Assembly (NCBI RefSeq): GCF_006345805.1
Contig: NW_021834476.1
Location: 1-48,123 of the forward strand
Direction of reading: 5' to 3'
DNA: 48,123 bases
DNA from: Octopus sinensis
Taxonomy: Eukaryota
This document shows positions 1,063-43,100 of this stretch, piece by piece. Positions within the stretch are counted from its first letter, which is position 1; every line of letters begins with the position of its first letter. Position numbers and translations under genes: made by a program. The notes beneath the pieces are model-generated. The model was not told where the DNA came from, made no database searches, and saw only the letters and a program-made list of their open reading frames with translations.

Positions 1063-3330
1063 TCACCATCATCATCATTTAGCGTCCGCTTTCCATGCTA
1101 GCATGGGTTGGACGGTTCAACTGCGGTCTGCACCAGGCCCAGTCTGATCTGGCAATGTTTCTATGGCTGGATGCCCTTCCTAACCCCAACCACTCCGTGA
1201 GGGTAGTGGGTGCTTTTTATTTTCCACCAGCACAGGTGCCAGACGGGGCTGGCAAACGGCCATGGTCAGATGGTGCTTTTTACGTGCCACCGGCACGGGG
1301 GCCAGGTGAGGCTGGCAACGGCCACGATAGGATGGTGCTTTTTATGTGCCACTGACACGGGGGCCCGGCGAGGCTGGCAACGGCCACGGTCAGATGGTTC
1401 TTTTTACGTGCCACCGGAACGGAGGCCAGGCGAGGCTGGCAACGGCCACAATCGAATGGTGCTTTTTACGTGCCACCAGCACGGAGGCCCGTCGGGGTGG
1501 GGCTAGCAATGGCCACGTTCGGATGGTTCGCTTTCATGCCACCGGCACTGTTATCACAGCTACAATTTCCATTGATGTTCATCGATTTTGATTTTGATTC
1601 TGATTCTCACTTGCCTCAACAGGTCTTCACAAGTAGAGTTTTGTGTCCCAAGAAGGAAAGGTATGCATAAGTGGACTGGCTGCATCCCAGGTATAGGTCA
1701 TGGGTTATGGTCTCACTTGTCCTGCCGGGTCTTCTCACACACAGCATACTTCCATAGGTCTCAGTCTCTAGTCATTTCCTTGGTGAGACCTAAGTTTGAA
1801 GGTCGTGCTTCACCACCTCGTCCCAGGTTTTCCTGGGTCTACCTCTTCCACAGGTTCCCTCAACCGCTAGGGTGTGGCACTTTTTCACACACCTATCTTC
1901 CTCCATTCTCATCACATGACCATACCAGCGCAAACGTCTCTCTTGCACACCACAACTGATGCTTCTTAGGTCCAACTTTTCTCTCAAGGTACTTACACTC
2001 TGTCGAGTATGAACACTGACATTACACATCCATTATACACATGCATCATACAATCTGCCTTTTACTTTGAGCGAGAGGCCTTTTGTCACCAGCAGGGGTA
2101 AGAGCTCTCTGAACTTTGCCCAGGCTATTCTTACTCTAGCAGTTACACTTTCAGCACACCCACCCCTGCTACTGACTTGGTCACCTAGGTAACAGAAGCT
2201 ATCAAATATTTCTAGTTTTTCTCCCTGGAATGTGATGGAAGTTGTTCTCTGCACATTTTCAGTGTTTATTGCTCCTGAGCAATTGTCACATACAAAAACT
2301 ATCTTCCCAGTAAGCCTTCCTTTGATATTGCTGCACCTCTTATGTGTTCATAGCTTACATCAAGTGCATCTTATAGAGTTTCTACCTATGCCTTTTCTAC
2401 AGATCAAGCAGGGCCATCTACCAGAAGGTGTTTGTTATTTGTCTACCTTCCTACTTATTCGGACTTCGGTTTTAGCTAGGTTGACTCTAGCTAGGCCCTT
2501 CAATTCTAATCCTTGCTTCTACACCTGAAACTTCTCCTCCAGTTCTGATAGTGACTCAGAAATTAGAGCAAGGTCATCAGCATAGAGGAGCTCCCAGGGG
2601 CATCCTGTCTTGAATTCCTCCATTATTGCCTGGAGGACTATGATAAATAGGAGGGGGCTGAGGACTGAGCCTTGGTGGACCCCAAACTCTACCCGGAATT
2701 TTTCACTGTACTCGTTGCCAAACCTCACCTTACTAGCAGCGTCCCTGTACATGGCTCACACAGCTCTAACTAACCATTCATCTATCCCTAGTTGCCTCAT
2801 TGACCACCAGATAAGGGATCGGGGGACCCTGTCGGAGGCTTTCTCCATGTCAACAAAAGCCAGGTACAGGGGCTTACCTTTGGCTAGGTATTTCTCCTGC
2901 AGCTGTCTTACCAGGAATATAGCATCAGTAGTACTTTTCCCTGGCACGAACCCAAACTGCATCTCATCTAAACTAACTCTCTCTCCAATTAGTTGGGCTA
3001 TGACCCTCTCTGTAACCTTCATTACCTGATCCAACAGCTTGATACCCCTGTAGTTATTTGTATCTAGGGCGTCACCTTTACCTTTGTAGCAGTTGACTAT
3101 TATGCTGCTACACCAGTCATTAGGAATGACTCCTTCGTGTATCACCTGGTTAACTATACGAGTGACTAGGCTATAGCCGACACTACCAGATATTTTGAGC
3201 ATCTCTGCAGTAATTCCTGATGGGCCTGGGGCTTTCCCTGTCTTCATGCTTCTAATTGCCTTAACTACCAAGGAACTGTCAACTTGGATAGCTGGTCCCT
3301 CTGTTGGGTCGACATTCGGCAGACTCTCTT
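1061..3330 (-). mobile_element. 5'-truncated RTE LINE (RT, PHD insert, C-terminus, 3' UTR, (TGA)n tail); disrupted
   Basis: ORFs 2756-3271, 2519-2752, 2033-2254 and 1790-2029 encode RT motifs (NYRGIKLL, QFGF, VDMEKA, QGSVLSP, YADD); colinear with the + copy from ~41560 onward. Confidence 0.95.
1211..1545 (-). repeat. ~62-bp minisatellite (~5.5 units) in the RTE 3' UTR
   Basis: Unit resembles GCTTTTTACGTGCCACCGGCACGGGGGCCAGGTGAGGCTGGCAACGGCCACGATAGGATGGT, repeated with divergence. Confidence 0.85.
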
Positions 3331-11683: not shown

Positions 11684-14600
11684 CTACAGGATCATGCTCA
11701 AAATGGTTTCGTCACTAGTACACACCATCTTTGCAACATTCCCCCATCTTTTTTTGAATCTTTCGCGAGACAAAACTTTCCTCTCCATTCTCACCTTCCT
11801 TTTCAAGTGATACTTGAAAAAGTTGATGAGCGATTGGCCAGAGAGGTAAGTGTTTGTCTCTAATCCTTTCACTCGGGTCCACCACACACATTCTTTCACC
11901 ATGGCCACCAGTACGATGAAAACTGCCTTGCCTTCCCGGTTGAGGGAAGGGGGCGGAGCAATTCTCAACATAGACTCGGCCGATAGGCGGATTCGTCCCA
12001 CACGTGACAGCAGCCGTTCGGCATGAGCCCACAGGTCTGAAATGGTTGGACATTGCATGAGTGCGTGCAGAATGGTTTCATCACTCTGACCGCATCTCGG
12101 GCAAGTCGGTCCAGTGTGTCTGGAACCGTGTCTGTAGAGCTTATCCTGAACAGGTAATGCTTCTCGATAGCACTGCCAGGCCAGGGATCTTTGGTGATTG
12201 TTCATAGGTCCCGGCCCGAAAGTTGTCCTGAACAAGCGGGTCAGGTGTTCCTCGTCGACGCCCAGACTCTGCCCGAGTTCGTCGTCGCACCTCCCCTCCA
12301 CTAATCCTCTATAGAATGCCTTTGTTGTGATGGAGTCGCACAAGTTTGATCCCGGACGGCAGAGTTGCTTGAGAGCAACGCGACACTCGCGGTGCCATTC
12401 GCCTAGCCTCGGTCTCTGCTTGATCCATGACTAGTTTGTCCAAGGAGACGAGCTGCGGGAAAGCGCGCCGCACAAAAGGCGACCACACCTGTTCACCGTT
12501 GTCTATGAAGCGCCGGAGATGTCGCAGTCTCAGCGCATATCTGCGCATCATCAACCACGGCATGCCCAGCCCTCCATTTAGCGGGTGTTGACAGCAAATG
12601 GATCACCTAACCATCGGAACGTTTCCCTTCCACAAGAAGTGGAAGAGTATACGTTCAAGTTTGGTGATGGTAGGGTTGGGACAAGGCACGACGGTCAGAC
12701 GATACTCGATGACGGATGCGATGTACGCGTTCGCCACCTCCGCACGACCTTTTAGGGATAGCTTTCTCTCAGCCTATTTCTGGTTGAGAGTAGCCACCCT
12801 AGTCGTTATCTCGCCATTTGGAGGTCCGGACCGAGCCAGACCCCGAGCAATTTAACCGGTCCGTCCGTCCAGCGTCCCACGATGGAGACGCTGTTGGACG
12901 GCATGGGCCTGCTTCTCCAGGTGCCGAGCCGCAAGCCCACTGACTTTTCCCAGTTAATTTTTGCTCCCGTTACTGCTTCGTATTCTTTTAGTGTCTCGCC
13001 GACCAGCTCGATGTGCTCGTAGCTCGACACTATGACAGTGACGTCATCCGCGTAAGCAGACACGCTCCTCCCGCATCCCAGCTCTCGTGGGATGCCCCTC
13101 AGCATCGCCAGTTTCCGCAGTAGTGGCTCAAGAGTCAATACATACAGCAGCGATGAGAGAGGGCATCCCTGACGAACCGAACGCATGATGTTAAAAGGTC
13201 TGAATAGATGACCATTTAATCGAACTACTGAGCGGATACCGTTGTATAAGGCAGTGATCCAACCGCGGAAAACTGGACCGAAACCAGCCGCTTTAAGGAC
13301 AGCCTCCAAGTAGTGATGGTCTACCCTATCGAAGGCTTTTGATTGATCCAAATTGATCAGCGCCCCACCCATGCCAAGATTCTTAACTACCCTGTCTATG
13401 ATGTAGCGCATCAGATGGAGGTTGTCATGAATACTTCTACCCGGCACGGCGCATGTTTGCGCCTTGTCGATTAGTTTCTTGATGACAAGCGCCAACCTCT
13501 CGGCTAACACCTTGGCCAAAATTTTCAAATCTGCGTTGAGCAGAGTGATGGGCCTGAAATTATCTATGACATCCCCCTTGTTTGGGTCTTTCTTAATCAG
13601 TGCCACTGCTCCTCGCTTTACAAAAGCAGGAATACTCCCGTTTTGCTGCCAGTTGCAGTAGACAGCTGCCAAGACGCCTCCAAACAAGTCTGGCATATGA
13701 AAATAAAGTTCGTAGGGCAGACCATCCAAGCCTGGTGACTTGTCTCTCGCGCATCTTACCATCGCATCCTGTACGTCCGCAGCTGTGATAGGCCTTTCAC
13801 AAGACTCCACCTCTCTTGCTGAGAGTCGTGGCAAGGCATGCAGGTAGGCACTAAAGTCCACTCTGCGTTCTGACCCACCACTTGTCCCAAACAGTTGGGT
13901 GAAGTGTTGTTGAAAAGCCCCACACATCCTTTTAGGGTCGAGCAATTCGCGCCCCTGTTCATCTATAAGAGACTTGATGGTGGCTCTGTTGCCTTGTTGC
14001 GTCTCCACCACTCAGGCCTCTTGGGCGGCTCCAACTCCTTCATTCCTCAGAGCACGCATTCTAGCTCTGACAACGCATCCCTCGTGTGTTGGCGTTGAGG
14101 TGTTGGTCGAGGGCCAATCTCGCCGCCAGCACGTTGGACGCGATGCCAGTTCTAAGTGCCTCTTCTAAAACCTTAACTAATTCTCCCTCTATTCTATTTC
14201 GGTCTAATGCTAGGGCTCTACTGTATCTGACTGATTCTGCTTTAATTGCTTTTTTTAGGGCATACCACCATCTGTTGTTGATGATGGTACCCGTCAAAGC
14301 TCTCTTAACTAATGTGCTGATCCGGTCCCTGTAAACCTGTCGTGCTGTAAAAGACACGTTCAGTTTCCAGTAACCAGGACCCTGCCTATGTGTCTTATCT
14401 AAGTCAAGTGTACAAGTCACAAACTTGTGATCTGTGTAACTGACTATATGAAATTGTGGACAACCTACACTATTTTTATCTATTGTCCTACAGAATACTC
14501 TATCTAAGTATGATCTGGACGACCCGATGCGGTTACTCCATGTCCACATTGGCACATTCGGGTGGTCCAGTCGGTACCTGTCAGACAGTTGGAAACGTCT

Positions 14601-15107
14601 GAGCAGGTCTTTGAGGCATTTGCATCCCCTTCTATTGCTATCTCTGCCCACGTAGTCTAGATGCGTGTCCAGGGTGGCATTCCAATCCCCCACTAAAAGT
14701 AAAGGACGAGACGTTCCCATGAAAGACTCTAGACGTCGAAAGAAATCTGGTCGGCCTGTTAAGGACGGAGCATAAACTGCTATCAGTCAAAAAGCACACT
14801 CATTGCTGCCATCGACATCCAAAACGACCAGCCTACCCTCCGGGTCTAGGAAATTTGCTCTTACTTTGAGATCCAGGCTCTTCCGGATAAGCATCGCGGT
14901 GCCACCTCCGCCCATTCTCGGTAGACACGGAGAAAAATAAATGTTGAAATGTGTACCGAAAATGTGCTGGAGTGCCCGCAAGCTGTGGAGTCTGGTCTCA
15001 CTGATGGCTATGATATTCAGATTTAGTGACTTGATGTCATTTAACAGGTAGCCTTGTTTCCAAGGCGACCCCAAGCCACGTACATTTATACTGCCTATTC
15101 TGAGCAT
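11684..15107 (-). pseudogene. Tx1 ORF2 (AP endonuclease, RT, C-terminal zinc finger); about 3 frameshifts and 3 TGA stops
   Basis: Motifs SINVRGL, ISETRL, GDWN, YLDRVF, TDHK; KSPGLDG, DQSKAFD, QGCPLS, YADD; CPRCGQSDETILHALMQC. Confidence 0.92.
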
Positions 15108-15173: not shown

Positions 15174-17263
15174 TTACTTGTTGTTCGAAAGTCCTTTGTC
15201 TTTCACCTCACGGTCTTCTTCTATGAGGCTTTTGTACAGTTTTTTTGATGAATACTTTTGAAATCTCCCTACTGCATCAGGGTAAAGAGATTTCAGGGTG
15301 CTGTATGTGTTCTGTGTTACGTGTATTATTTTAATGTGTTGTGGTGGTGTTGTGCGTGGGTGGTTACTTGTTTTTATGTCGTTTTCAGTTATGTTGGTGT
15401 TTGACCTAATGTGTTCCATTAAGTCGTGGTTGTTTGTATTTATGGCTGTCAACATTGTTGGGGGGTTTGATGATGGTGTGTTTGTGTTGATGTGTTTGTT
15501 TTCTGTGGATGTTTTTGTTTCGGGAGTGGTGTATCTTCCTGCTTTGTTTGTTATCTTTTCTTTTCTTTTTTTTCCCCTTTTTTTTCTCCCCCCTGTGGCT
15601 ATTTGCCAATCTTCTGTGTCTTCTTCGTCTAATGACAAATCAGAAGAATCAGAGCTTGGAAGAGGGAAAATATTGGGGTCTATTGTAGACTGTGTTGATT
15701 TTGTTCTTGGTGTTGGTTGGTGAGCGTTTGGTTGTGGTGTATGCGGTTTTGGAGGTGGGATGTGGGTATTTTGTGTTTGAGTGATTGTAGGTATTGTTGT
15801 GTTGTTCGGGGTCTCAATTTTGTGGGGATTTGGACTAGTAATTGTTTCTTCATTTTCGCTGAGTGTCTTTTTGGCAGATGTCCTTGGTTTGGGAGTTGGT
15901 TTATTCTTGGTTGTTGTTGTTGGTGATGTTGCTTCTGTTCCTGGTGCAGTTGGTGTGGTTGTTTGGTTGGTGAGGTTTGTTTTTTGTTGGTTTTCTGTGA
16001 TTAGTCCTGTTCGTGCAAAACGTGGTGTGGGTAGTAAACCTGGTTTATTTGTTTTTTCCGGCTGCTGTTGTTGTTGTTGTTGTTTTCTTGTGGCAGATTT
16101 GCAGTCTTTTTTTAGGTGTTGCTCACTGCCGCAAATGTAGCAACGTGGTCTTCTGCCATCGACGACCACATACAACTTGTGGTCTTCTGATACACATATC
16201 TGGGTGGGTATTTTTTTTATGTCTTCTTGATTTATATGTAGTAGAAATTCTACTTTTTTTCCCACCCAGTTTTTGTGCTCCGTGACCGTGGTTTCTAAAA
16301 TAGTGAAATTTTTCATTTTTACATATAAGGCCTTTACTAGCCATAGATTATTAGCTATTTTTGGGACATTGTTTAAAGTGATCTTAGTCACTTTCTGTCC
16401 CCGATAACTTGGTGTTAATGTAAGTTCATCTGAATGAAGAGTTAGCGTTGAGAAACGTCTTGCTAACTCTTCAGTGTGGAAAACTACTTGTATGTGTGCG
16501 AACTTGTTCCACCAGGTCACATAGTCTTTGTAGTTCCAGATGGGTTTCAAGCATTTTTCTATTTTGCTTGTGTTAGCCTTCTCTGGGCTTTTTGTTTTCT
16601 TATTAATTATTTTATAAATAATTGTTCTTTTTTTTCATCTTCTAATATTTCTTCTGGTATGTTTATTTTTACTACACCATCTATTTCTGTTATTGTAATG
16701 TTCGTGTCTTTTATTTGTTGAGCAGTAAAATATACTGTTGTCTTTTTTTCTTTAATCGCCTCGGCGAAATTTGTTGTTGTTTTGTCATTGTTGTTGCTGG
16801 TGGTGATGTTGTTGTTGGCTGCAGTTGGTAAAATTGGTGTGTTTGGTTTGATTGTGCAAGTAGGAAGGGGTGGAAAATTATTTTCATAATTTAACCCTGT
16901 ATTCGAGCAGCTTTTGTCAATTTGTTTGGTGGTTACAGTCTTTTGTTTATTCACTTCAGTTCTTGTTGTTGGAGTAAAACAGGTCTGAACGGAATTGTTG
17001 TTGTTGTTATTGTTGTTTTTGTTGTTGGTGGTGGTGTCAGTGGCAGAAGAGACAGCCGTGGCAGCAGATGTCGAAATGGTGGTGCAATTTTTATTTTTGT
17101 TGTCATTGTTATTGTTGTTGTTGTTGGTAGTTGAGGTAGTGAATGAGGTGGTGGTGGTGGTGGTGGTGAAGGCGGTGGTGGTAACAGTAGTAGTCTCTAT
17201 GTTGTTCTTGCTAGTGGCGGTGTTGGTGACAGGGCTGTTACTACAAGTAGTTGTAGCGTTCAT
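15174..17263 (-). pseudogene. Tx1 ORF1 (gag-like, ~696 aa if one A is restored in the A8 run at 16628-16635)
   Basis: ORFs 16607-17263 and 15174-16550 are joined by a single 1-nt frameshift; zinc knuckle CYICGSEQHLKKDC; Asn/Thr/Gln low-complexity ends. Confidence 0.8.
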
Positions 17264-18339: not shown

Positions 18340-18472
18340 ACTTAGCGGTTCGGCAAAAGAGACCGATAGAATAAGTACTAGGCTTACAAAGTCCTGGGGT
18401 CGATTTGTTCGACTAAAGGCGGTGCTCCAGCATGGCCTCAGTCAAACGACTGAAACAAGTAAGAGAATAAGA
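18340..18472 (+). mobile_element. SINE 3' tail fragment (same family as 205-612)
   Basis: Near-identical to 475-610. Confidence 0.85.
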
Positions 18473-18592
18473 GAGAAAAAAAGACAATTTTTTGCTCTCA
18501 CACAATTCTTTACTTGTGCTATTTTTTTTTACAAAATATTTATCGTTGATAACTGCTGAACACAACCACTGATAGATCTATCTAAAGTTAAG

Positions 18593-19690
18593 ATGTCTGA
18601 AAAGAAACAATCAAGTGGGACTGAAGGTAATTGTGCATAAAAGAATTGTAAAAGGATTATGCTGCATATTAAACGTGGAGAAAAAATTATCCATACTGCT
18701 AAAACATAACATTAAAAACAATATATGATAACAGAGTGAAAATTAAATGCTCAAGAATCTACTCCATTAACTGCTCAAACATTATTTTATCACATAACTA
18801 ATGTGATGCTTGAAATGGAATGCCTTTTGTGTAAACCACAGATCACACTTGACATAATATGCAAAGTAATTCAATGCAAAGCCAAAAGTTTGCATGACAA
18901 TCTGCATAAAAGGGAAGGTGGAACTTCTAATGAAAACCCTTTCCTGACAAAATCTGGTTCGAAAGGTTCAAGAAGAGCTTAAAATTGTACAACATAAAAA
19001 TGGCTGGTGAAGCTGCCATTGTTGATATAGAGGCTGCTACTAATTATCCCAAGCATTGCTGAAGGAGGCAATATTAAAGAAACAATATAATGTACTTTTC
19101 TTGAAGTACATAAAAGCTAGAACTGTTATTTCTCATGAACAAAAATCAAAACCAAGGATTTACAAATTTAAAAATTGTAAAAGAATTTACAGCTTTAAAA
19201 ACTGCCTGATGCTCTTGTACCACTCCAAAATTTGAAGGCCTTTCAAGAACTTTGCAAAGTTTAATCTACCACTGAGTTGGCATTCAAACAAGGCATGAAT
19301 AACTAAGAACCTTTTCAAAGAGTGGTTTAGAAACATCTTTTGTTCAACTGTTGTCAGGTAAGTGCCAGACATAATATTTTCAATAAAACATTGCTCCTTT
19401 TAAACAATACACCAATTCACCCAATGTGCTTTCTGATAATGTGAGAACAGAATATATCCTCAGGAATACAACTTCCTTGCTCCAGCCAATGGAACAAAGT
19501 GTGATAGCTCACTTCCAGGCATACTATTTGAAAAGAACCTCCAAACAATTTATAAAGCAATCAACAGGGAAAATAAATTATGTGACTGAACTGCTAGTGC
19601 ACATTGTGCCTAGATTGGCTAATTCAGGAAAAAAATCATATCACATGTGGTGAAAAATGATTATCTGGTAGGGGCTTTTAAGGGTTCTTC
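18593..19690 (+). mobile_element. Tigger/pogo transposase fossil, N-terminal and DDE part
   Basis: Translated fragments WFERFKK, IKMAGEAAIVD, AWITKNLFKEWF, LLLLNNTPIHP, NTTSLLQPMEQSVIAHFQAYY, FKGF. Confidence 0.85.
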
Positions 19691-19719
19691 ATTTACTCTG
19701 TTTCTCCGCCCCCCCCTTC

Positions 19720-21968
19720 CTTTTGAGGGTTTGATTTGACTTGCATTTACATCACCCTGCAATGATTTTGTACTCTCTGCAAATTAATTTGAAAATCAAA
19801 ATTGAAATTCAGCACTTTGTTGTGCCCATTTTGTCCAACTGCCCAACTTGTGTTGAAGAATGAGATGTTCTTGCTGTTGAACTTGAACCACCTTTTGAAG
19901 GATGTCTATCAGTCAAATGTTCTTCTTGGTGACAAAACTATCATTGTACATTGCAAAACAGAGTGCTCAATAGTTGATTGAAAAATGGTCTCCCTGCTTC
20001 AAGTGGAGCATTCTATTATCTGTGTTATACATCATGAACTACTGTGAACAACATTGGAGTGAAATCTGAAGGTTATGATATTACCAAGGACTATGCTTCT
20101 TGCAATACAGCATAGGAGAAGCTGTCAGCTGGGGACATTGCCTAGACAAGGACAATGTCATGAGAACATCATCAAAGCTGATCTCTTTTGTTTTTCTGTT
20201 CTTCACTTTAAGCTGCAATCATTGGATTTTGCACAGAAAATTCTCTACCACCTTGTTGACGGTCAGAAGATCTGGAGTGAGACAGCAAACCTTAATGTGA
20301 TGTAATTTGTAGGTCAAGCCAAAAAAGAATGCGTTGATGCTATCCATTCCAGTACTGGAATCTTAATGGATTCACCATGTGCTTCAGTGGGGTGGGGAAC
20401 ACCAATACTGGTCCCCTGGCTGATCGGTTCTTCAGTCCAGTTCACCATGATATAATTTGTTCATTGATTCTCAATAAAGAAGATTAACAAAACTACTGGA
20501 TTTTTTTGTCATTGATGAACATCATGCTCACTGTTATGCAATCAGTTAATGCAACAAAGAAGGTGCAAGTTGATGTGTTGAAGTCACTGGGCATAGAGCT
20601 GATGATGCACATGAAGAAAGTGTTCTTCAATGAGAAGGGGCAGCCTTGGGTGATGATCATTCCATCTTTCCACCAAATATGTGCATAGCTGGCAGGTCTT
20701 TGAGTTAAATGGTGGTCAATCAATTGCTAAATGGAGTGAGAGTCCAGTGGAGAGTTGGAATAACATGAAAGGTCGTTTCCAAGTGGTCCTTCTGCAAGAT
20801 CTTGCCAGCTTTCAATCAAAGATAACATCCATGACATCTTCAGAAGAATGTCCATTATGTCACATCCAACAATTGCTTCAAAACAAGTTGTTCTGTCTGT
20901 GGTGAAGTTGGTCACACAGTTTGTTCTTCAAAACATAAGAAGGTGTCTGCTTTGACAGAAGAACAATCAAGAATCGAATCACTATATTACTAACTGGCCC
21001 ATATTACGCATATTTATTGTTTGGCATTGTTGTTTCAATATTTGCTGTGAATAATAAGTGATCGCTTTTCACAATCCAGTGCAAATTATTCTGATTTTCT
21101 TTGTGAATCATGGGGAGTAGATTCATTGTATTTCCCTTGCAGGAGTGGGTGGGGGTGGGGTTAGACTATGGTAAAGATTCAATCCAGGGATTCGTTGGGA
21201 ATATTTTCCTTTTGTTATCTCATGTTTTGGACCTTCTTCAATTTCGGTGAAACCAAAGCAAAATCCTCCAAGCCAGAATCTGACCTTCCTAAACAAATTT
21301 TTACCCCATAATAGAGGCTAAATGCCAAAAAAAAAAAGTACATTTAAGATTATTTCAAAACATTTATTGGGTTTTGAATCCATTTTATGTTTCCTGTTTT
21401 TATACTTGTTTAATCACTTTGGAGGTCGATAAGTACCAATTTTACCCAATTTTGGTTGGTTTTGATGTTTGGTACCCCTTTGAACTGATTTTTTTCCACA
21501 GTTCACATAAAATGTTGAGGATGTCAAATGTGGTAGCCCTTAATATGTCAAAATTTGTCATTTAAAAAAAAAATTATCAAGTTTGATGGGATTTTACCAA
21601 AAATTTGGATGTTTCTATCAAAGACTTATATTTTTCATGCATCTCCTATCTTCTCAAATTTCTCAAATTTATGTTGGCCTATGCTGTAGCTTGACTGAAA
21701 GACAATAAAAAATGCTTCTAAATAAGTTCAAACAGAGGTTAAAAATCTTTTTTGTAAAAGAAAATATGTTCAATCTTATTGATACTCAATTAAAAAAAAA
21801 ACATAAATTTCGTTAAATTGGCTCGACTTTAAAGAGCTATAAAAATTTAACCATACATTATTTTAAACTCAGGTATTTTGTTTTGTAATCTCCTGAGTTT
21901 AGAGAACCAGAAAATATGCATTTCAAACATCTGGGGGAAACTTCAAAAGATGATAAATTCCCACTCTG
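19720..21968 (+). mobile_element. Transib / RAG1-core-like transposon fossil, 5'-truncated; coding ~19850-20993, putative right TIR CCCACTCTG at ~21960
   Basis: Ordered fragments SIVD*KM, FYYLC, SVLHFKL, GNTNTGPLADRFF, PSFHQICA/HSW, SIAKWSESPVESWN, KDNIHDIFRRM..SHP, CSVCGEVGH. Confidence 0.75.
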
Positions 21969-21974
21969 GGCACA

Positions 21975-22340
21975 ATATGCAGTGTCTCACTGAGACTGTT
22001 TATCTAACAAAGAGTTGATGCTGTTAGAACAAGAACTGAGAATACAAATAAGAATATAGAAACTCTATCAACTTCACTTAAATTGACAGAAAGAATATTG
22101 TTAAACGGTTGGCATTTATAGACAAAGGTCTGCAAAGTTTTTGATGATAACACCCTTAATCATGAACATAACAAAAATTACAATGAACTCAGTTCCTACA
22201 CTGAGCTGTACAAAGAGATGATGCACTATAAACATCAAACAACTTTGGATAAGTGTTTCATATCTGAAGTAGAAGTTGATGACGATGATGATGAGACAGA
22301 AGACTGTGTTCCTCATCATCCCAGTAATGCTCATTCCACC
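21975..22340 (+). mobile_element. C-terminal continuation of the Tigger transposase
   Basis: Fragments SH..LSNKELMLLEQE and YTELYKEMMHYKHQTTLDKCF resemble the Tigger C-terminus. Confidence 0.65.
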
Positions 22341-24910: not shown

Positions 24911-25637
24911 ATACTTATATTCAAGGAAATGAACAATTTTCATACAAAGACTAAATAAATTAAAAACTAAATTGTTCCACTGCCTTAATGTAATGTTAAA
25001 TCTCTTTCTCATTGAGTATACTCTTCTTTTAATGATATATATCAAGAAAAAAAAACAAAGAAAAAAACTTAAAAACCACTTGTTACCTTATTGTGCTTTT
25101 TTTGCAATGGATAATGATCCAACTTCGTGGACAAAAGAACCATATCAGGAGGAAAGCTGAAGAAGATATTTTGGCATGAGCTTGTAGATATTGTAAGAAC
25201 ATATGCTTTATCAGTAGATGTTGTGTCAGCTGTGAAAAATATTGCATATAAAGTGTTGCAATACATTTTTGCCCAGAAGAATACACTATAGCAATCCACA
25301 CTGAAGAACCTTCTACTTCTGCTGTTTCTTTCTCAGTAAGAGATGTAGATGATTTTCTTGCAGTAGAAATAGTTCTCAAAAAAAAAAAAAAGGAGAAAAA
25401 CGTAGAAGAGATTACTGTTCTTCTTTCTCCCATTAGATTGCTGTTCATGTTGAATAAACAACCTGTCAAACACAAACAAAAAAAATTGTGATTTTTCAAC
25501 TGCTAATTTTTAATTTTTCATTTAAATCTTTCATTTGCTTATTTGGATACGTAAATGTCATGTTGATTATTTCAATTGTTCACATATCATATAGACTGAA
25601 ATTTACCAAGAGTTTTAATTAGATTCTTTTTCTTTTA

Positions 25638-25793
25638 TTCTTTTACTTGTTTCAGTAATTTGACTGTGGCCATGCTGGAGCACCACCTTGAAGGGTTTTA
25701 GTTGAATAAATCAACCCCAGGACTTATTTCTTAAACCTAGTATTTATTCTATCAGTCTCTTTTGCCAAACTGCTAAGTTACAGGGACAAACAC
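25638..25793 (-). mobile_element. SINE 3' tail fragment (family of 205-612), diverged
   Basis: Reverse complement resembles 455-610. Confidence 0.8.
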
Positions 25794-30496: not shown

Positions 30497-31781
30497 TCGG
30501 GTCATTAAGGATGAAATGTCCGATCTGGAACTGAAAGTTTATTTTACTTTATCTCAGCAAAAAGCAATGCAGTTAATCGAGGTATGCACCTAAATTATCA
30601 ACACAATTTTGCCATCTTATCAGTAGCTTATTTATGCCGGCAGTGAAGAATTCTGGAGAGCAAGGGGTGATGAAATCAGGAAAAGCTGTTTTTGCATCTT
30701 CTTCAGATTTGAAGTTTTTTCCTCGCAAAAAGTTGTCTAATGCCTGAAAAATATGATAGTCAGTTGGTTCAAGGTTTGGTGAATATGGTGGATGACAGAG
30801 TACTTCCAAGTTCAGTTCTTGTAACTTGAGTAGTGTCCTTTGTGCAATATGTGGTCGAGCATTGTCTTGCAAGAGAATTGACCTGTCTCTATTGACCAAT
30901 CTCAATTGTTTATTTGCAAGTTCACTCATCATTTCATCCAAATGGTTGATGTATACATCTGCTGTAATTGACTTGCCAGGTCTCATGAAGATGTAGTGGA
31001 AGACACTTGAGCTGGATCACCAAACAGACACCATTAGCTTCTTTTGGTGAATATTCATTTTTGGATTGTGTTTTGGCACTTTGTCTCTGTCTAACCACCA
31101 TGCAGAACACTTGCTATTATTGAAAAGAATCCATTTTACAACACATGTAGCAATACAATGCAAAAATAGTTCTCTTTTATACCGTGACACCGAAGAAGAG
31201 CAAGTTTCAAGACAACATGTCATTAGATGCTTATTCAGTTTGTGTGGTATCCATTTGGCCAGCTCCTTTACCATGCCAATTTGTTCCAGATGGTCCAATA
31301 TAGCTGGAATCGAAACAGCAAACCTTGCTGTTAACTCATGCGTAGTTTGAGATGTATCTGCTTCCAATAAAGTTTCCAGCGCATCATTATGCACCTTGGT
31401 CTCATGTCTACCACAGGGCTGGTTTTCAAGAGTAAAGTCACAAGACTGGAACTTCTCAAACCATCGACGTACAGTGCGCTCATTTGCCACATCTTCACCA
31501 AACATCTCACTGATGTTTTGAGCTGTCTGGGATGCATTGGTTCCATGACAGAATTCATACTCATAAACAACACGAATTTTTTTATCTATCTATGGGTTCA
31601 CAAAAATTGATTTAAAAGAGAAAACACACAATATAATCAGACTCCATGAACTGCATTTTGAAAAGTGATGATGTAATTCTTCAATGTTATAAAACAAAGA
31701 ATTGTAGGATAAAACATTAGAGTTAACAACTGTTAGACTTGGTGCATAAGAAAATCAAATATTTCATTCTTAATGACCTGA
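30497..31781 (-). mobile_element. Full-length mariner (DD34D) element, 1285 bp; transposase 30573-31589 inactivated
   Basis: ~28-bp TIRs with TA on both sides; HTH, WIPHKL, QDNARPH, YSPNLEPTDY; probable start ATG>ATA, one in-frame TGA, first catalytic D lost (TCVVKW). Confidence 0.92.
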
Positions 31782-35749: not shown

Positions 35750-36186
35750 TGCACATGCAAACAAAAACATTAAATCATAAATATGTAACTTCCATTCAAT
35801 GAATGACAATTAGTTCTTCACTATCTACCTAAGATTAACATTATATTTTAAATCATTCAATGCAATTATGAACAATATCCTTCTGATATATTATCATGAT
35901 CATCATCATCATTATTTAACGTCTGTTTTGGCATGGGTTGGACAGTTTGACTGAGGTTTAGAAAGCCAGTGGCTGAACCAGTCAAACCATCCAACCCATG
36001 CCAGCATGGAAAACAGATGTTACACGATGAAGATGATGATGATATATCAGAAGGATATTGTTCATAATTGCATTGAATGATTTAAAATATAAAGATAATC
36101 CTAAGTAGATAGTGAAGAACTAATTTTCATTCATTGAATGGAAGTTACATATTTATGATTAAATTTTTTTCGTGTTTGCATGTGCA
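35750..36186. repeat. Fold-back hairpin (~205-bp arms, 25-nt loop) containing an RTE 3' tail in each arm
   Basis: 35750-35953 pairs with 35979-36186. Confidence 0.9.
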
Positions 36187-36289
36187 TGCACACATGTACC
36201 TGTGCACATCTCCCAAAAATACTAGGTACTAAACCAGTATTTCCTTGGATGCAACCATCCCTTCACGAAGTTAACATCCTCTAATTAAT

Positions 36290-36340
<51 letters not shown>

Positions 36341-36414
36341 AATATTAGGGAATAAATCCAAATTTACAGGGAAAAATCAGATTTAGGATTAAATCCAATT
36401 TTATAGTAAAATAT

Positions 36415-36584
36415 TATATAATATTATTAGAGACAAAACCACTATTTTGCAAAACAACAAGGAAAGACTTAATCAATACATAAAATTTTAATAAAAAGTC
36501 AAAAAATTAAAATTTTATGTATTGATTAAGTCTTTCCTTGTTTGTTTTGCAAAATAGTGGTTTTGTCTCTAATAATATTATATA
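36415..36584. repeat. Near-perfect palindrome (78/79-bp arms, 13-nt spacer, one 1-nt indel)
   Basis: 36415-36492 versus 36506-36584. Confidence 0.92.
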
Positions 36585-36931
36585 TATATATATAATATAT
36601 ATATATATACAAATTGAGATAGGGGTTGTAAATGCAACCCTCCATGGGATAATATATATCCAATATACTGCTAGTGAAGTACCCAACATGGTTAATACAT
36701 AAATGTTAAGGATTGCGATGCAATCAATTCATTTACTGTATTATATGGGCAAAGGTAAAATGATTTACCACAAATTACTAATACAAGATAAGAAAATGGA
36801 GAAATACATCTAAATCAAATATCAATTACCAGATAATACTCAATCACATATGTATATATATATATATGTATATACATGTATATATATGTATATGTATATA
36901 TATATGTATATATACATATGTATATATACAT

Positions 36932-37042
36932 GCTAAAAAGCATCTGTGAGGTAAACCCGTGTAGCAAACCAAATGGCGGTGCCCCAGCATGGCCACAGCT
37001 CATTAGCTGAAACTGGAAAAATCAAAATCAAAAATCAAAATC
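36932..37042 (+). mobile_element. Very short 3' terminus of the CR1 family, with (AAAATC)n tail
   Basis: Matches the reverse complement of ~45890-45995. Confidence 0.85.
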
Positions 37043-38257
<1,215 letters not shown>

Positions 38258-39110
38258 TCATCATCATCATCATCATCGTTTAACGTCCGTTTTCCGCGCT
38301 AGCACGGGTTGGACGGTTCGACTGGGGTCTGGGAAGCCAGGGCCCGCTCCAGGCTCCAGTCTGATCTGGCAGAGTTTCTACGGCTGGATGCCCTTCCTAA
38401 CGCCAACCACTCCGTGAGTGGAGTGGGTGCTTTTTAGGTGCCACCTGCACAGGGGCCGGGGGGGTCCGGCATCGGTCGCGATCGGTTCGAGCTTTTAACG
38501 TGCCATGGCACGGGGGCAACGGGATCCGGGGTACTTTGAATGGGTAGGGGTGGGGAAGGTTGGGGGTAAGGAGGAACGATGGCAGGAAGGGTTGGTGCAG
38601 GTTCGTAAGAAATAAAAACGTAGGATATTACAAGGCATGGAGGGGACTGGAAGGAGATAGTAGGATTGAGGCAGTGTCAGATTCAAAACAGGAGGAAGCG
38701 TAAGATCAGTGGGCGGTTGATGAGCTGTGATGCTAGCAGCTTGTCTTTTCACAGTGAAAGCATATGAGGAGAAGGGGTAGGAAGGGGTGGTGGAGGAGGA
38801 GGGGGGAGTATCCGGTGTAGATGGTGAGAACAGTGTTCACCGGTATTGGTGGTGGGGGTGGGAGGGCGGGCGCACGGCGCACTGGGAGAAGATGAGATTT
38901 TGGCGGCAGAAAGAAAGACAGGATTTGAGATGGAATGCTTTGCGATCGTGTGCATAAGTTTCTATGAGTGGAAGTTGGAAAAAGATGGGTTAGAGAATTA
39001 AGCGACAGAAAGAAAGACCAGATTTGAGACGAGATGTTTTTGCGGTCGTGTGAATAAGTTTTTGTGAGTGAAAGTTTATATGCTTCAGCTAGCATTTGAG
39101 ACGAAAGACA
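38258..39110 (-). mobile_element. ORF-less element with an RTE 3' tail (probable non-autonomous RTE derivative)
   Basis: (TGA)n tail plus ~200 bp matching the RTE 3' end; C-rich body with an internal tandem duplication at ~38900-39065. Confidence 0.6.
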
Positions 39111-39909: not shown

Positions 39910-40153
39910 CTGCCCTCCCACCCCCTCCACCGGTACAGGAAGTCCTAAATTTTCTCATCCTTGTCTCCCTTGTACACTTCAAAGTCTTACGCCACCCTCA
40001 CCCCCTACCATAAAAGGTAGTAGTCATTCATTGCAAGATACACTTCAAGTCTTACGCCACCCCCACCTCCTTCCATAAAAGGTAGTGGTCATTCATTGCA
40101 AGATATGTTTAGTGTTGTGTACGCGGTTTGAACTTAAGTTCTATTCTCTGTCT

Positions 40154-43100
40154 ATGAATCCTGCCAAACGCGAGTTTTCTTTTCAGGTCCATGACGCTAC
40201 TAGGCCCAATACCACCACCACCCACACCCTCAGGGTTGGCACCCTCAACGTTGGCACACTGAAAGGCAGATCTGGCGAGATCGTTGAATTGCTTGAACGG
40301 AGGTGTGTGGATATATGCTGCATTCAAGAAGTGAGGTGGAGAGGAGGTTCTGCTAGGTTCCTCACAGGCAAAGGACAGAGGTACAAGATTTTCTGGGCTG
40401 GGAATACTGACGGGGTCGGGGGAGTGGGCATGCTTATCGCCGAAAAATGGGTAGATAAGGTAATCGAGGTAGTCAGAGTATGTGACAGAATAATTAAGAT
40501 TAGATTAGTGCTCCATCATAGTTTAGCAAATATTATATCGGCCTATGCCCCTCAGCCAGGGCTACCTGATGGACAGAAAGACTGTTTCTATGACACCCTA
40601 CTGCAGACCACATCATTGACGAACGACAGGGACCTTCTCTTTGTGGCTGGTGACTTCAATGGGCATGTTGGACGATGTGCTGGGGGCTTCCATGGCGTGC
40701 ATGGAGGCTACGGTTATGGTTCCCGCAACGAGGAGGGAACCAGGCTGCTGGAGTTCTGCGATGCGAATAGTCTTATGGTTTGCAACACTAACGTCAGGAA
40801 ACCGACAAGCCACCTGGTCACCTACCGATCGGGCTGGCATACTAGCCAAATCGACTACATCCTTGCCAGAAAAAGGGAAAGATGGCTGCTTATAAATGCC
40901 AAAACCTTCCCAGGCGAAGAATGCACCCCACAACATAGACTGGTAGTTAGTGACTTTAGGATCAGGACTAAGAGGGCGACTAGAAGACGACCAACATGGA
41001 GAAGAAGGGTCTGGAAGCTTAAAGACCCTGCGAATGGACAGAGATTTAGAGATATGTTATTTGAAGCCTTAGACGAAATGGAAGGGAGTATAGCTACGCA
41101 TGGGGTAGAAGACAACTGGACGCTTCTGAGGGACAACCTGCTGAAAGCCGCTGACCGATCTGTGGCTGGTGTGCAAAGTCCCCTTAAGACCCAAAATAAC
41201 GTGGTGGTGGAACAATATTGTTGACAGGGCTATTAGACAAAAGAAACAGGCTTGGAAGGCCTGGAAGAACGGTGGTAGCAGGGAAGTGTATCAGACTGCC
41301 AGAAGGGAAGCCAGGAGACAGGTCTATCTAGCCAGAAGGGAGGCAGATAAGGAAAAATTTGCCAATGTCCTGCGCCGTGAGGATGAAAGACTTGAGGTAT
41401 TTCGTGTTGCAAGACAGTGTGTGAGAGAGAACCGTGACGTGGTAGGAGAGAAGTGTGTTCGCAAGGATGACGGTTCACTTGCGCTAAATGAGGATGCAAA
41501 GAGAGAGGCTTGGAGACGCCACTATGAAAGGTTGCTGAATGAAGAAAATGAATGGGATAAAGAGAGTCTGCCGAATGTCGACCCAACAGAGGGACCAGCA
41601 ATCCGAGTTAACAGTTCCTTAGTAGATAAGGCAATTAGAAGCATGAAAACAGGGAAAGCCCCAGGCCCATCAGGAATTACTGAAGAGATGCTCAAAATAT
41701 CTTGTGGTGTCGGCTATAGCTTAGTCACCCGTATAGTTAACCAGGTGATACACGAGGGAGTCATACCCAATGACTGGTGTAGCAGCATAATAGTCAACTG
41801 CTACAAAGGTAAAGGCGACGCCCTAGATACAAATAACTACAGAGGCATCAAGCTGCTGGATCAGGTAATGAAGGTTACGGAGAGGGTTATAGCCCAACTA
41901 AATAGAGAGAGTGTTAGCTTAGATGATATGCAGTTTGGGTTCGTGCCAGGGAAAAGTACTACTGATGCTATATTCCTGGTAAGACAGCTGCAGGAGAAAT
42001 ATCTAGCCAAAGACAAGCCCTTGTACCTGGCTTTTGTTGACTTGGAGAAAGCCTTTGACAGGGTCCCCCGATCCCTTATCTGGTGGTCAATGAGGAAACT
42101 AGGGATAGATGAATGGTTAGTGAGAGCTGTGCAAGCCATGTACAGAGACGCTGCTAGTAAGGTGAGGGTTGGCAACGAGTACAGTGAAGAATTCCGGGTA
42201 GAGGTTGGGGTCCACCAAGGTTCAGTCCTCAGTCCCCTCCTATTTATCATAGTCCTCCAGGCAATAACGGAGGAATTCAAGACAGGATGCCCCTGGGAGC
42301 TCCTCTATGCTGACGACCTTGCTCTAATTGCTGAGTCACTATCAGAACTGGAGGAGAAGTTTCAGGTGTGGAAACAAGGATTAGAATCGAAGGGCCTTAG
42401 AATCAACCTAGCCAAAACCAAAGTCCTAATAAGTAGGAAGGTGGACCATCACAAACGACTTCAGGTAGATGGCCCTGCTCGATCTGTAAAAAAGGTGTAG
42501 GTAGAAACTCTATAAGGTGCACCAAGTGTAAGCTATGGACACATAAGAGGTGCAGCAATGTCAAAGGAAGGCTAACTAGGAAAATAGTTTTTGTCTGTGG
42601 CAGATGCTCAGGAGCAATAAACACTGGAAATGTGCAGAGACCAACTTCTACCACGTTCCAGGGAGACAAACTAGAAGTAGTTGATAGCTTCCGCTACCTA
42701 GGAGACCAAGTCAGTAGCGGGGGTGGGTGTGCTGAAAGTGTAACTGCTAGAGTAAGAATAGCTGGGCAAAGTTTAGAGAGCTCTTACCCCTGCTGGTGAC
42801 AAAAGGCCTCTCGCTCAGAGTAAAAGGCAGACTGTATGATGCATGTGTACGTACAGCCATGCTACATGGTAGTGAAACATGGGCCGTGACTGCTGAGGAT
42901 ATGCGTAAGCTTGCAAGAAATGAAGCCAGTATGCTCCGATGGATGTGTAATGTCAGTGTTCATAATCGTCAGAGTGTAAGTACCTTGAGAGAAAAGTTGA
43001 ACCTAAGAAGCGTCAATTGTGGTGTGCAAGAGAGACGGCTGCGCTGCAATGGTCATGTGACGAGAATGGCTGTAGATAGTTGTGTGCAAAAGTGCTACAC

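What the first reader, a model, noticed from the sequence alone, without database searches (positions are those of the whole stretch)
19720..21968. Fossil Transib/RAG1-core-like transposase with a C-terminal CX2CX3GH tail and an RSS-heptamer-like end
The ORF track shows only short pieces here. Stitched across frames, the + strand gives the RAG1/Transib core motifs in the correct order. SIVD*KM (D at 19976) matches Transib TMxDGK and RAG1 D708. FYYLC matches the CxxC zinc pair. SVLHF matches RAG1 ALHC (H795). GNTNTGPLADRFF matches Transib GxTNDGNTARRFF. PSFHQICA/HSW (one frameshift) matches RAG1 FHKTLAH. SIAKWSESPVESWN (E at 20750) matches RAG1 SIGAWASEGNESGN (E962). DNIHDIFRRM..SHP follows. 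A tentative first-Asp motif (*GFD) lies at 19724-19735. Just before the stop at 20991-20993 is CSVCGEVGHTVC, resembling the CX2CX3GHX4C tail motif described for invertebrate RAG1-like transposases and absent from jawed-vertebrate RAG1. The element ends about 1 kb downstream in CCCACTCTG, one mismatch from the CACTGTG heptamer-like TIR, just before Tigger sequence resumes. No RAG2-like ORF is visible. The motifs are seen in the sequence; the family assignment is established-knowledge motif matching; an intermediate position between Transib and RAGL is inference.
Basis: partly seen in the sequence, partly recalled or inferred. Interest (0 to 1): 0.8.

Follow-up and report, generated by a model that had tools for sequence, protein, structure and literature searches.

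The report
Dead Transib transposon inside a Tigger
This is a broken, 5'-deleted copy of a Transib DNA transposon, the family related to the RAG1 recombinase of vertebrate immunity. It sits inside an older Tigger transposon, so it is an ordinary genomic fossil, though its lineage keeps several RAG1-like ancestral features.

Summary
A stitched 400-aa translation hits uncharacterised proteins at E=2.6e-136. Profiles of those proteins hit the HzTransib transposase (2.3e-38), amphioxus RAG1L (7e-15) and RAG1 (1e-10).

The element spans window 19600-21979 (2,380 bp). It has decayed CACAGTGTGCCCAG-type inverted ends and a 4/5-matching 5-bp target duplication (TAGTG/CAGTG), and it is nested in a Tigger copy. 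Three relatives from other assemblies have perfect CACAGTG ends and perfect 5-bp duplications. They also have RSS-like 13/22 spacer asymmetry, one transposase gene and no RAG2-like gene.

The window copy keeps only the C-terminal ~55% of the transposase (19855-20993), with 7 frameshifts and 5 stops. About 1.5 kb, including the first catalytic Asp, is missing.

Two details in the finding fail. "*GFD" is not the first Asp motif. The true 3' end is 12 bp beyond "CCCACTCTG".

The CX2CX3GH tail is genuine, and wider relatives carry the full CX2CX3GHX4C. Such tails, a RAG1-length zinc-domain insert and asymmetric ends are already described for "Subgroup I" Transibs (Tao 2022). A neighbour-joining tree excludes placement inside RAG1/RAG1L.

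Verdict: a new member of a known kind, of low to moderate interest.

The parts
18934..19594 (+). Upstream half of the host Tigger/pogo copy (decayed), interrupted by the Transib insertion
   Evidence: Pfam DDE_1 hits in two frames. tblastn with lobster 'tigger transposable element-derived protein 1-like' proteins P0176-P0178 runs up to 19572.
19595..19599 (.). Left copy of the candidate 5-bp target-site duplication (TAGTG)
   Evidence: Lies directly outside the 5' terminal repeat and matches CAGTG at 21980-21984 in 4 of 5 positions. Relatives L001, L003 and L005 have perfect 5-bp duplications at the same position.
19600..19637 (+). 5' terminal inverted repeat, RSS23-like. Heptamer CACATTG (19600-19606; family consensus CACAGTG), conserved 14-mer to 19613, 22-nt spacer, A-rich nonamer AAAAAAATC (19629-19637).
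   Evidence: Inverted repeat I6. The family 14-mer CACAGTGTGCCCAG has only two window matches at <=2 mismatches, here and at 21966-21979 on the - strand; 0.25 are expected by chance. Relatives have the same layout. The Transib consensus in PMC1131882 is heptamer + 23-bp spacer + AAAAAAATC.
19638..19854 (+). 5' subterminal remnant with no detectable coding or nucleotide homology. It contains the junction of an internal deletion of about 1.5 kb.
   Evidence: Neither blastn/tblastx against three relatives nor the family profile aligns here. In relatives the equivalent of window 19855 lies about 1.75-1.8 kb from the 5' end, against 255 bp here.
19855..20993 (+). Transposase pseudogene, equivalent to aa 313-698 of the 702-aa relative P0021. 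Frameshifts at about 19900, 20003, 20134, 20393, 20683, 20768 and 20887. In-frame stops at 19979, 20035, 20113, 20303 and 20485. Retains the second Asp (19976-19978), the Glu (20750-20752), a ZnC2 pair with its first Cys changed to Tyr (20005-20025), the ZnH2 histidines (20662-20701) and GNTNTGPLADRFF (20395-20433).
   Evidence: Frameshift-aware alignment gives 67% identity to P0001 aa 151-537 over 370 codons. Also tblastn, profile search and coordinates.
20889..20936 (+). C-terminal zinc-knuckle tail CSVCGEVGHTVCSSKH (CX2CX3GH...H)
   Evidence: Close relatives have CS(V/I)CGEVGHTARSx(R/K)H. Of 69 tails found among the family proteins read, 30 carry the full CX2CX3GHX4C and 4 more the CX2CX4HX4C form. 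Pfam zinc-knuckle hits are weak and below threshold.
20994..21950 (+). 3' non-coding part of the element (32% GC)
   Evidence: No stop-free stretch longer than 90 aa on either strand. Only the terminal ~137 bp is conserved with a relative. Relatives have equally non-coding 1.0-2.1 kb 3' parts.
21951..21979 (-). 3' terminal inverted repeat, RSS12-like. Read on the - strand: heptamer CATATTG (21973-21979), 14-mer CATATTGTGCCCAG, 13-nt spacer, A/T-rich nonamer AATTTATCA (21951-21959).
   Evidence: The same 13-nt spacing occurs at the 3' ends of L001, L003, L005 and L006.
21980..21984 (.). Right copy of the candidate 5-bp target-site duplication (CAGTG)
21985..22262 (+). Downstream continuation of the host Tigger copy
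   Evidence: tblastn with P0176/P0177/P0178 resumes at 22017-22262. The flanks joined in silico align colinearly to P0176 aa 152-252 straight through the junction.

Best explanation
Window 19600-21979 is an old, immobile copy of a cut-and-paste DNA transposon of the Transib superfamily, the sister group of RAG1/RAG1L. It inserted into a Tigger (pogo-type) element.

Shown here:
- The remnant ORF is homologous to Transib/RAG1-core transposases.
- The element is bounded by decayed copies of the family's CACAGTGTGCCCAG termini and by a 5-bp duplication matching at 4 of 5 positions.
- Intact-ended relatives are 4-5 kb single-gene elements with perfect 5-bp duplications.
- Their ends are built like a 23-RSS at the 5' end (heptamer, 22-nt spacer, A-rich nonamer) and a 12-RSS at the 3' end (13-nt spacer).

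Inferred from established work on HzTransib, ProtoRAG and RAG: active family members excise by nicking next to the CAC of the heptamer. They form a hairpin on the flanking DNA through the DDE RNase-H-like site, then reinsert with a 5-bp stagger. The N-terminal GRP(K) motif and the C-terminal zinc knuckle would help read the spacer and nonamer part of the ends.

The window copy cannot do any of this:
- It lacks about 1.5 kb, including the N-terminal 45% of the transposase and the first catalytic Asp.
- It carries 7 frameshifts and 5 stops.
- One zinc-binding Cys is changed to Tyr.
- Position 3 of its 3' heptamer, which is essential in RSSs, is mutated (CAC to CAT).
For: Homology:
- The stitched translation gives E=2.6e-136 and 59% identity to P0001.
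- The frameshift-aware alignment gives 67% identity over 370 codons.
- Family profiles against the PDB give HzTransib 6e-29 and 2.3e-38, BbRAG1L 7e-15 and RAG1 1e-10.
- A low-confidence AlphaFold model (pLDDT 55) still finds only RAG1, HzTransib and BbRAG1L among its 46 significant Foldseek hits; the next hit has E=0.24.

Ends:
- Inverted repeat I6.
- The family 14-mer matches the window only at 19600 (+) and 21979 (-) at <=2 mismatches, against 0.25 expected.
- TSD TAGTG/CAGTG.
- Relatives L001 (5,007 bp, TSD CATTT), L003 (3,956 bp, TAATG) and L005 (4,325 bp, CGATG) all have CACAGTGTGCCCAG ends and the same 22/13 spacing.

Single gene: there is no long or conserved ORF in the 3' parts, and no RING/RAG1 N-terminal domains in relatives.

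Nested insertion: the Tigger flanks are colinear across the joined site.

Tree: RAG1/RAG1L form a clade with 100% bootstrap that is separate from this family, which itself has 98% support.
Against: - The TSD is imperfect (4/5) and both heptamers are mutated, so the boundaries rest partly on relatives from other, unidentified organisms.
- The first Asp motif is absent from this copy, so the full DDE triad is shown only in relatives.
- 217 bp (19638-19854) and most of the 3' ~950 bp have no detectable relative.
- The tree is neighbour-joining on 551 columns. Some anchor sequences were copied from a PDF supplement and have OCR errors, and deep nodes are weak (12-65%).
- The nick-hairpin mechanism and the DNA-binding roles of the tail and the GRP(K) motif are inferred from HzTransib/BbRAGL/RAG work, not tested for this family.
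Confidence: 0.93

Rival explanations
1. It is the RAG1L half of a RAGL (RAG1L-RAG2L, ProtoRAG-type) transposon whose RAG2L gene has decayed beyond recognition in the ~1 kb 3' region.
For: It has a CX2CX3GH tail like CTT* of invertebrate RAG1L. The CxxC-to-LH spacing is RAG1-like: 61-64 aa in the family, against 67-72 in the two RAG1L anchors. A profile hit to BbRAG1L reaches 7e-15. There is about 1 kb of unexplained 3' sequence.
Against: Three relatives with perfect ends have only 1.0-2.1 kb of 3' sequence, with no ORF above 131 aa and no conserved coding signal. A kelch + PHD RAG2L needs about 1.2-1.5 kb. Full-length relatives (~700 aa) lack the RING/ZDD N-terminal region. RAG1/RAG1L form a 100% clade excluding the family. 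HzTransib scores far higher than BbRAG1L. CCGHC tails and the long zinc-domain segment are already known in Transibs (PMC9435367, PMC10462144).
Confidence: 0.03
2. The element was already a short, non-autonomous deletion derivative when it inserted, mobilised in trans by a full-length copy. On this reading it did not lose ~1.5 kb after insertion.
For: Both ends and a TSD-like duplication are retained while an internal 5' block is missing. That is the usual product of abortive gap repair in cut-and-paste families.
Against: Nothing discriminates the two histories here. No other copy with the same deletion junction was available, and the heavy later decay (7 frameshifts, 5 stops) shows that indels accumulated in situ as well.
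Confidence: 0.4
3. The motif matches are chance, or belong to an unrelated DDE transposase family.
For: Pfam finds nothing in the region. A single-sequence search of the PDB finds no RAG1 or Transib.
Against: E=2.6e-136 to real proteins. Profile hits to HzTransib, BbRAG1L and RAG1 cover the whole core. Foldseek hits are exclusive to this fold family. Pfam simply has no Transib model; the RAG1 model gives 21 bits to P0011 (below its 25-bit cut-off) and 32 bits to P0065 (above it).
Confidence: 0.005
4. It is a domesticated, host-functional RAG1-like gene.
For: None beyond homology.
Against: It has 7 frameshifts and 5 in-frame stops, and has lost the N-terminal 45% including one catalytic Asp. 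It lies inside another transposon and keeps transposon ends.
Confidence: 0.01

Closest known systems
Subgroup I Transib transposons sensu Tao et al. 2022 (PMC9435367), e.g. Pleurobrachia PbaTransib_0868, Mnemiopsis MleTransib, Hydra Transib-9_HM
   Same: Single transposase gene and 5-bp TSD. CAC-heptamer TIRs with asymmetric spacers. A long segment between the ZnC2 CxxC pair and the LH histidine (61-64 aa here, 77 in Pba, 30 in HzTransib). A C-terminal zinc-knuckle tail (CTT1). A GRP-type N-terminal motif. All 96 of the top-150 family representatives that cover the region have the long segment (57-84 aa in 94 of them, with outliers at 45 and 128); none has the ~30 aa of HzTransib.
   Different: The NJ tree does not group the family with the Pba anchor; the node has 17% support, and an alternative grouping with HzTransib/Jli has 65%. 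The window's immediate subfamily has replaced the fourth Cys of CX2CX3GHX4C by Ser and uses a His 6-7 residues after the first His. The best relatives of the host Tigger are from a lobster, hinting at a bilaterian host, whereas the Subgroup I examples named in the paper's main text are ctenophores, Hydra and a bacterium.
HzTransib (Helicoverpa zea Transib transposase; PDB 6pqn and related entries)
   Same: It is the best solved-structure match (E=2.3e-38 across the core). Same DDE positions, ZnC2/ZnH2 ligands, G(N/T)TN(D)G...A(R)RFF motif, single-gene element and 5-bp TSD.
   Different: HzTransib lacks about 34 aa after the CxxC pair. It ends right after the SS(D/H)P(L/x)I motif and has no zinc-knuckle tail.
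ProtoRAG / invertebrate RAGL transposons (BbeRAG1L + BbeRAG2L; PDB 6b40)
   Same: Homologous core (E=7e-15). CX2CX3GH(X4C) tail family (PMC7204232). CAC-type heptamer ends and 5-bp TSD.
   Different: No RAG2L gene, no RING/ZDD N-terminal region, and a position outside the RAG1/RAG1L clade.
Jawed-vertebrate RAG1 and its 12/23 recombination signal sequences
   Same: Core homology (E=1e-10). Relatives carry the exact RSS heptamer CACAGTG and a 13/22 spacer asymmetry with A-rich nonamers. The CxxC-to-LH spacing (62 in the RAG1 fragment) is almost the same.
   Different: It is a mobile element, not a recombinase locus. It has no RAG2 partner, and a zinc-knuckle tail where RAG1 has an acidic tail (PMC10462144).

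Membership tests
Transib superfamily DNA transposon | Transposase homologous to Transib/RAG1 core with the DDE triad in conserved motifs | tested here: met
   Profile hits: HzTransib 2.3e-38, RAG1 1e-10. The second Asp and the Glu are present in the window. The first Asp is present only in relatives, in GKFGxDGSG; it is deleted in this copy.
Transib superfamily DNA transposon | Terminal inverted repeats starting with a CAC heptamer resembling the RSS heptamer, plus a second A-rich block | tested here: met
   Window ends are CACATTG... and CATATTG... (decayed). Three relatives have CACAGTGTGCCCAG, then a 22- or 13-nt spacer, then an A/T-rich nonamer. This was compared with the published consensus CACAATG-N23-AAAAAAATC.
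Transib superfamily DNA transposon | 5-bp target-site duplication | tested here: met
   Window TAGTG/CAGTG matches at 4 of 5. L001 CATTT, L003 TAATG and L005 CGATG are perfect.
Transib superfamily DNA transposon | Single gene; no RAG2-like partner | tested here: met
   No long or conserved ORF lies in the 3' parts of the window copy or of four relatives.
Transib Subgroup I (Tao et al. 2022) | Retains the segment equivalent to RAG1 alpha11-alpha12 in the zinc-binding domain | tested here: met
   There are 61-64 residues between the second Cys of CxxC and the LH histidine. Compare 30 in HzTransib and Jli, 62 in the RAG1 fragment, 67-72 in the two RAG1L anchors and 77 in Pba. That this segment is alpha11-alpha12 is inferred from the paper's description.
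Transib Subgroup I (Tao et al. 2022) | CTT1-type (CX2CX3GHX4C) C-terminal tail | tested here: inconclusive
   CX2CX3GH is conserved. The fourth Cys is kept in P0027, P0086, P0097 and 27 other representatives, but is replaced (Ser, with a later His) in the window's own subfamily. Homology of the tail to CTT1 is likely but was not shown by alignment to BbRAG1L.
Transib Subgroup I (Tao et al. 2022) | Asymmetric TIR pair | tested here: met
   A 22-nt spacer at the 5' end against a 13-nt spacer at the 3' end, in the window and in L001, L003 and L005.
Transib Subgroup I (Tao et al. 2022) | Phylogenetic grouping with Subgroup I members | tested here: inconclusive
   In the NJ tree the family is 98% monophyletic, but its deep attachment is unresolved: 65% with HzTransib/Jli, and 17% for the clade containing Pba. 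Profile scores favour the long-insert lineages (P0065, 211 bits) over HzTransib (104-135 bits), although the two scores come from different searches.
RAGL transposon (RAG1L-RAG2L) | Convergent RAG2L gene (kelch propeller, usually + PHD) between the TIRs | tested here: not met
   Absent in the window and in three complete relatives.
RAGL transposon (RAG1L-RAG2L) | RAG1L N-terminal non-core region (RING/ZDD and C1-C3 zinc motifs) | tested here: not met
   Pfam finds no RING or zf-RAG1 domain in seven full-length relatives. Their N-termini are 170-250 aa with only a GRP(K) motif.
RAGL transposon (RAG1L-RAG2L) | Placement within the RAG1/RAG1L clade | tested here: not met
   FcoRAG1L + AanRAG1L + the RAG1 fragment form a 100% clade that excludes the family.

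The most novel reading that the evidence does not exclude
The family behind this fossil may be an uncatalogued bilaterian (possibly crustacean) Transib lineage. It would branch between Tao's Subgroups I and II while keeping the whole ancestral RAG1-like kit:
- a GRP(K) nonamer-binding-type motif
- the RAG2-contact-sized zinc-domain segment
- a zinc-knuckle tail remodelled from CCHC to CCHH
- ends with the exact RSS heptamer CACAGTG and 13/22 spacers

Some members would be recently active: L003/L004 have perfect ends, a perfect TSD and an open 574-aa ORF. Such a lineage would date the loss of these features in classical Transibs. It would also offer a tractable single-protein model of the pre-RAG2 transposase.
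Probability: 0.3. Interest if true: 0.45.

Novelty: new member of a known kind. Interest (0 to 1): 0.3.

Why it matters
The window copy is one more dead transposon and matters only for repeat annotation. It shows a nested insertion and gives exact boundaries.

The family it reveals is of modest interest for RAG evolution. It is a single-gene Transib lineage with the exact RSS heptamer, 12/23-like spacer asymmetry, a RAG1-length zinc-binding segment and a variant zinc-knuckle tail. All of its members found here come from unannotated public assemblies (ENA, JGI, Logan); the only name any source gives is 'hypothetical protein', and none has an above-threshold Pfam domain.

Martin et al. 2023 (PMC10462144) ask for biochemical analysis of further Transib transposases to infer the properties of the first RAGL transposase. 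The apparently intact relatives could serve that purpose.

Tried and rejected
- Pfam on the three raw frames found only the flanking Tigger DDE_1.
- Single-sequence phmmer against the PDB found no relative; profiles were needed.
- I looked for the first Asp motif upstream of 19855 with tblastn, a family HMM at maximum sensitivity, blastn and tblastx. Nothing was found, so '*GFD' is rejected.
- Pfam on the in-silico joined Tigger flanks did not extend the DDE_1 hit across the junction. A search for Tigger proteins was then used instead.
- The structure prediction from the 10-sequence alignment was poor (pLDDT 55). It was used only as a fold-family check, not for structural detail.
- Cluster look-up gave only one name ('hypothetical protein') and no accessions or organisms for family members. 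An Rfam scan of the window gave no hit. The host organism is therefore unresolved, apart from the lobster-Tigger hint.
- A literature search for Transib in molluscs and cephalopods was unproductive. Zhang et al. 2019 is not held.
- The bacterial CthTransib sequence was read but left out of the tree because it is very divergent and OCR-damaged.
Full report
**What is in the sequence.** The window is AT-rich eukaryotic DNA (about 36% GC) packed with transposon remains. The only exception is the proposed first-Asp motif. None of them has a Pfam domain on record. A frameshift-aware protein-to-DNA alignment puts P0001 residues 151-537 on 19864-20987 at 67% identity. It needs seven frameshifts (about 19900, 20003, 20134, 20393, 20683, 20768, 20887) and passes five in-frame stops (19979, 20035, 20113, 20303, 20485).

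**Which family.** Pfam sees nothing here, and a single-sequence search of the PDB finds nothing. Profiles of the intact relatives do find matches. A 10-sequence profile gives HzTransib transposase (6pqn) at E=6e-29 and RAG1 at about 1e-4. A profile including full-length members gives HzTransib 2.3e-38, amphioxus RAG1L (6b40) 7.1e-15 and RAG1 1.3e-10. An AlphaFold model of P0011 was poor (pLDDT 55). Even so, all 46 of its significant Foldseek matches are RAG1, HzTransib or BbRAG1L, and the next hit has E=0.24. An exhaustive profile search finds 2,586 representative clusters at E<=1e-3 and 222 at E<=1e-30. Full-length members are 700-790 aa.

**Element boundaries.**
- A 21-nt, 86% inverted repeat links 19598-19618 to 21961-21981.
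- Relatives fetched with their flanks gave three complete elements, all starting and ending with CACAGTGTGCCCAG and flanked by perfect 5-bp duplications:
  - L001 8518-13524 (5,007 bp, TSD CATTT)
  - L003 2018-5973 (3,956 bp, TSD TAATG)
  - L005 4127-8451 (4,325 bp, TSD CGATG)
- In the window this 14-mer matches at <=2 mismatches only at 19600-19613 (+) and 21966-21979 (-), against 0.25 matches expected by chance.
- The element is therefore 19600-21979 (2,380 bp), with flanks TAGTG and CAGTG.

**Architecture of the ends.** All copies share a bipartite, asymmetric layout. The 5' end has the heptamer, a 22-nt spacer and an A-rich nonamer; in the window this nonamer is AAAAAAATC at 19629-19637. 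The 3' end has the heptamer, a 13-nt spacer and an A/T-rich nonamer. This is the RSS23/RSS12-like design described for Transibs in 2005 (consensus CACAATG-N23-AAAAAAATC; PMC1131882).

**Nested insertion.** Sequence on both sides belongs to one decayed Tigger. Pfam DDE_1 hits lie upstream. The nearest proteins are 'tigger transposable element-derived protein 1-like' of Homarus americanus. Their tblastn matches stop at 19572 and resume at 22017. The flanks joined in silico align colinearly to P0176 residues 152-252 through the junction. A Pfam scan of the joined flanks was not informative.

**State of this copy.** Only profile positions 144-535 of 535 are detectable. This corresponds to residues 313-698 of the 702-aa relative P0021. 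In relatives that point lies about 1.75-1.8 kb from the 5' end; here it lies at 255 bp. So about 1.5 kb is missing, including the 5' leader and the N-terminal region with the GRP(K) motif. The first catalytic Asp (GKFGxDGSGSHK) is lost with it.
- The '*GFD' at 19724-19735 aligns to nothing and is rejected.
- The second Asp (19976-19978) and the Glu (20750-20752) survive.
- The first Cys of the CxxC pair is now Tyr (GAFYYLC).
- The Gly after the Asp is now a stop.
- The third base of the 3' heptamer is mutated.
The copy is dead. Whether the deletion preceded or followed insertion cannot be told from one copy.

**No RAG2L.** The 3' parts of the window copy (986 bp) and of L001, L003, L005 and L006 (1.0-2.1 kb) contain no stop-free stretch above 145 aa. 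Between them only the terminal ~40-140 bp is conserved. Pfam finds no RING or RAG1 N-terminal zinc domains in seven full-length relatives.

**The tail.** CSVCGEVGH is conserved. In the window's own subfamily it continues TARSx(R/K)H, a CCHH-like arrangement. The Cys in the window's 'GHTVC' is a private substitution at the Arg position. Of 69 tails found among the family proteins read, 30 have the full CX2CX3GHX4C and 4 more have CX2CX4HX4C. The motif defines CTT* of invertebrate RAG1L (PMC7204232). It has also been reported in Transibs (PMC10462144) and is called CTT1 in Subgroup I Transibs by Tao et al. 2022 (PMC9435367).

**Position relative to RAGL.** Tao et al. define Subgroup I Transibs by three traits: retention of the RAG1 alpha11-alpha12-equivalent segment, CTT1 and asymmetric TIRs.
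- The family has 61-64 residues between the CxxC pair and the LH histidine. Compare 30 in HzTransib and a plant Transib, 62 in the RAG1 fragment, 67-72 in the two RAG1L anchors and 77 in a ctenophore Subgroup I Transib.
- All 96 top representatives that cover this region have the long form (57-84 aa in 94 of them); none has the ~30 aa of HzTransib.
- I built a neighbour-joining tree of 551 columns with 100 bootstraps. Its anchors came from the PDB alignments and from Tao's supplement. RAG1 + RAG1L form a 100% clade that excludes the family, which itself has 98% support. The family's deeper attachment is unresolved (65% with HzTransib/Jli).
It is not a new link to RAGL.

**Mechanism.** Shown here are homology of the catalytic core, RSS-like 13/22 ends with a CAC heptamer, and 5-bp duplications. 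Inferred from HzTransib, ProtoRAG and RAG biochemistry is the reaction itself. A paired-end complex would nick 5' of each heptamer and form a hairpin on the flanking DNA. The blunt-ended element would then integrate with a 5-bp stagger. The GRP(K) motif and the zinc-knuckle tail would contact the spacer/nonamer part of the ends. None of this can occur with the window copy.

**Verdict.** This is a decayed, 5'-deleted Transib-superfamily transposon nested in a Tigger (confidence 0.93). It is a new member of a known kind. The host organism is unidentified; the Tigger relatives hint at a decapod crustacean. Family members occur only in unannotated assemblies.

Noticed in passing
window 18934-19599 and 21985-22262: The host element is a decayed Tigger/pogo copy. 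Its closest proteins are 'tigger transposable element-derived protein 1-like' of the lobster Homarus americanus (37-46% identity). This hints that the window comes from a decapod crustacean. Compared with the 423-aa lobster protein, the copy also lacks about 60-70 residues downstream of the insertion.
   Followed up: partly
L003 2018-5973 and L004 (same element in a second sample): An apparently recently active relative. It has perfect CACAGTGTGCCCAG ends, a perfect TAATG duplication and an open 574-aa transposase ORF. A 101-aa upstream ORF probably forms the N-terminal exon; an intron or a frameshift separates the two. Two independent ENA assemblies hold it.
   Followed up: partly
window 11687-14720, - strand: A nearly open non-LTR retrotransposon: zf-RVT 11687-12343, RVT_1 12809-14011, endonuclease 14064-14720. 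Its GC content is about 53% against a 36% background.
   Followed up: partly
window 15177-17263, - strand: Two long ORFs (458 and 218 aa) with no Pfam hit. They are rich in T/N/Q/P low-complexity runs. The first contains a CX2CX4HX4C zinc knuckle, so it may be a Gag-like ORF1 of a retroelement.
   Followed up: no
window 30576-31505, - strand: A Mos1/mariner-type transposase remnant split into two ORFs (HTH_48 and Transposase_1; DDE_3).
   Followed up: partly
window 40085-43200 (+) and 2610-3271 (-): A second non-LTR retrotransposon with long open endonuclease (379 aa) and reverse-transcriptase (443 aa) ORFs. A partial copy of the same reverse transcriptase lies near the window start.
   Followed up: partly
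window 36000-38300: About 2.3 kb of microsatellite at 17% GC. It reads as (Y/I/C/M)n in all frames.
   Followed up: no
window 43412-45497, - strand: Tandem units of roughly 100 codons form long open frames (320 and 149 aa) with repeated 'CHRHRC..RLANGH.RMVF' blocks. There is no meaningful Pfam match and the nature is unknown.
   Followed up: no
window 18340-18481, 473-613, 25624-25778: A dispersed repeat of about 140 bp is present three times (89% and 80% identity, one copy inverted). It is probably a SINE or MITE.
   Followed up: no
L001, L005, L006 flanks: Relatives of the Transib sit among LTR retrotransposons, hAT/ZBED and Pao elements in their own contigs. The whole family is known only from unannotated ENA/JGI/Logan assemblies.
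   Followed up: no
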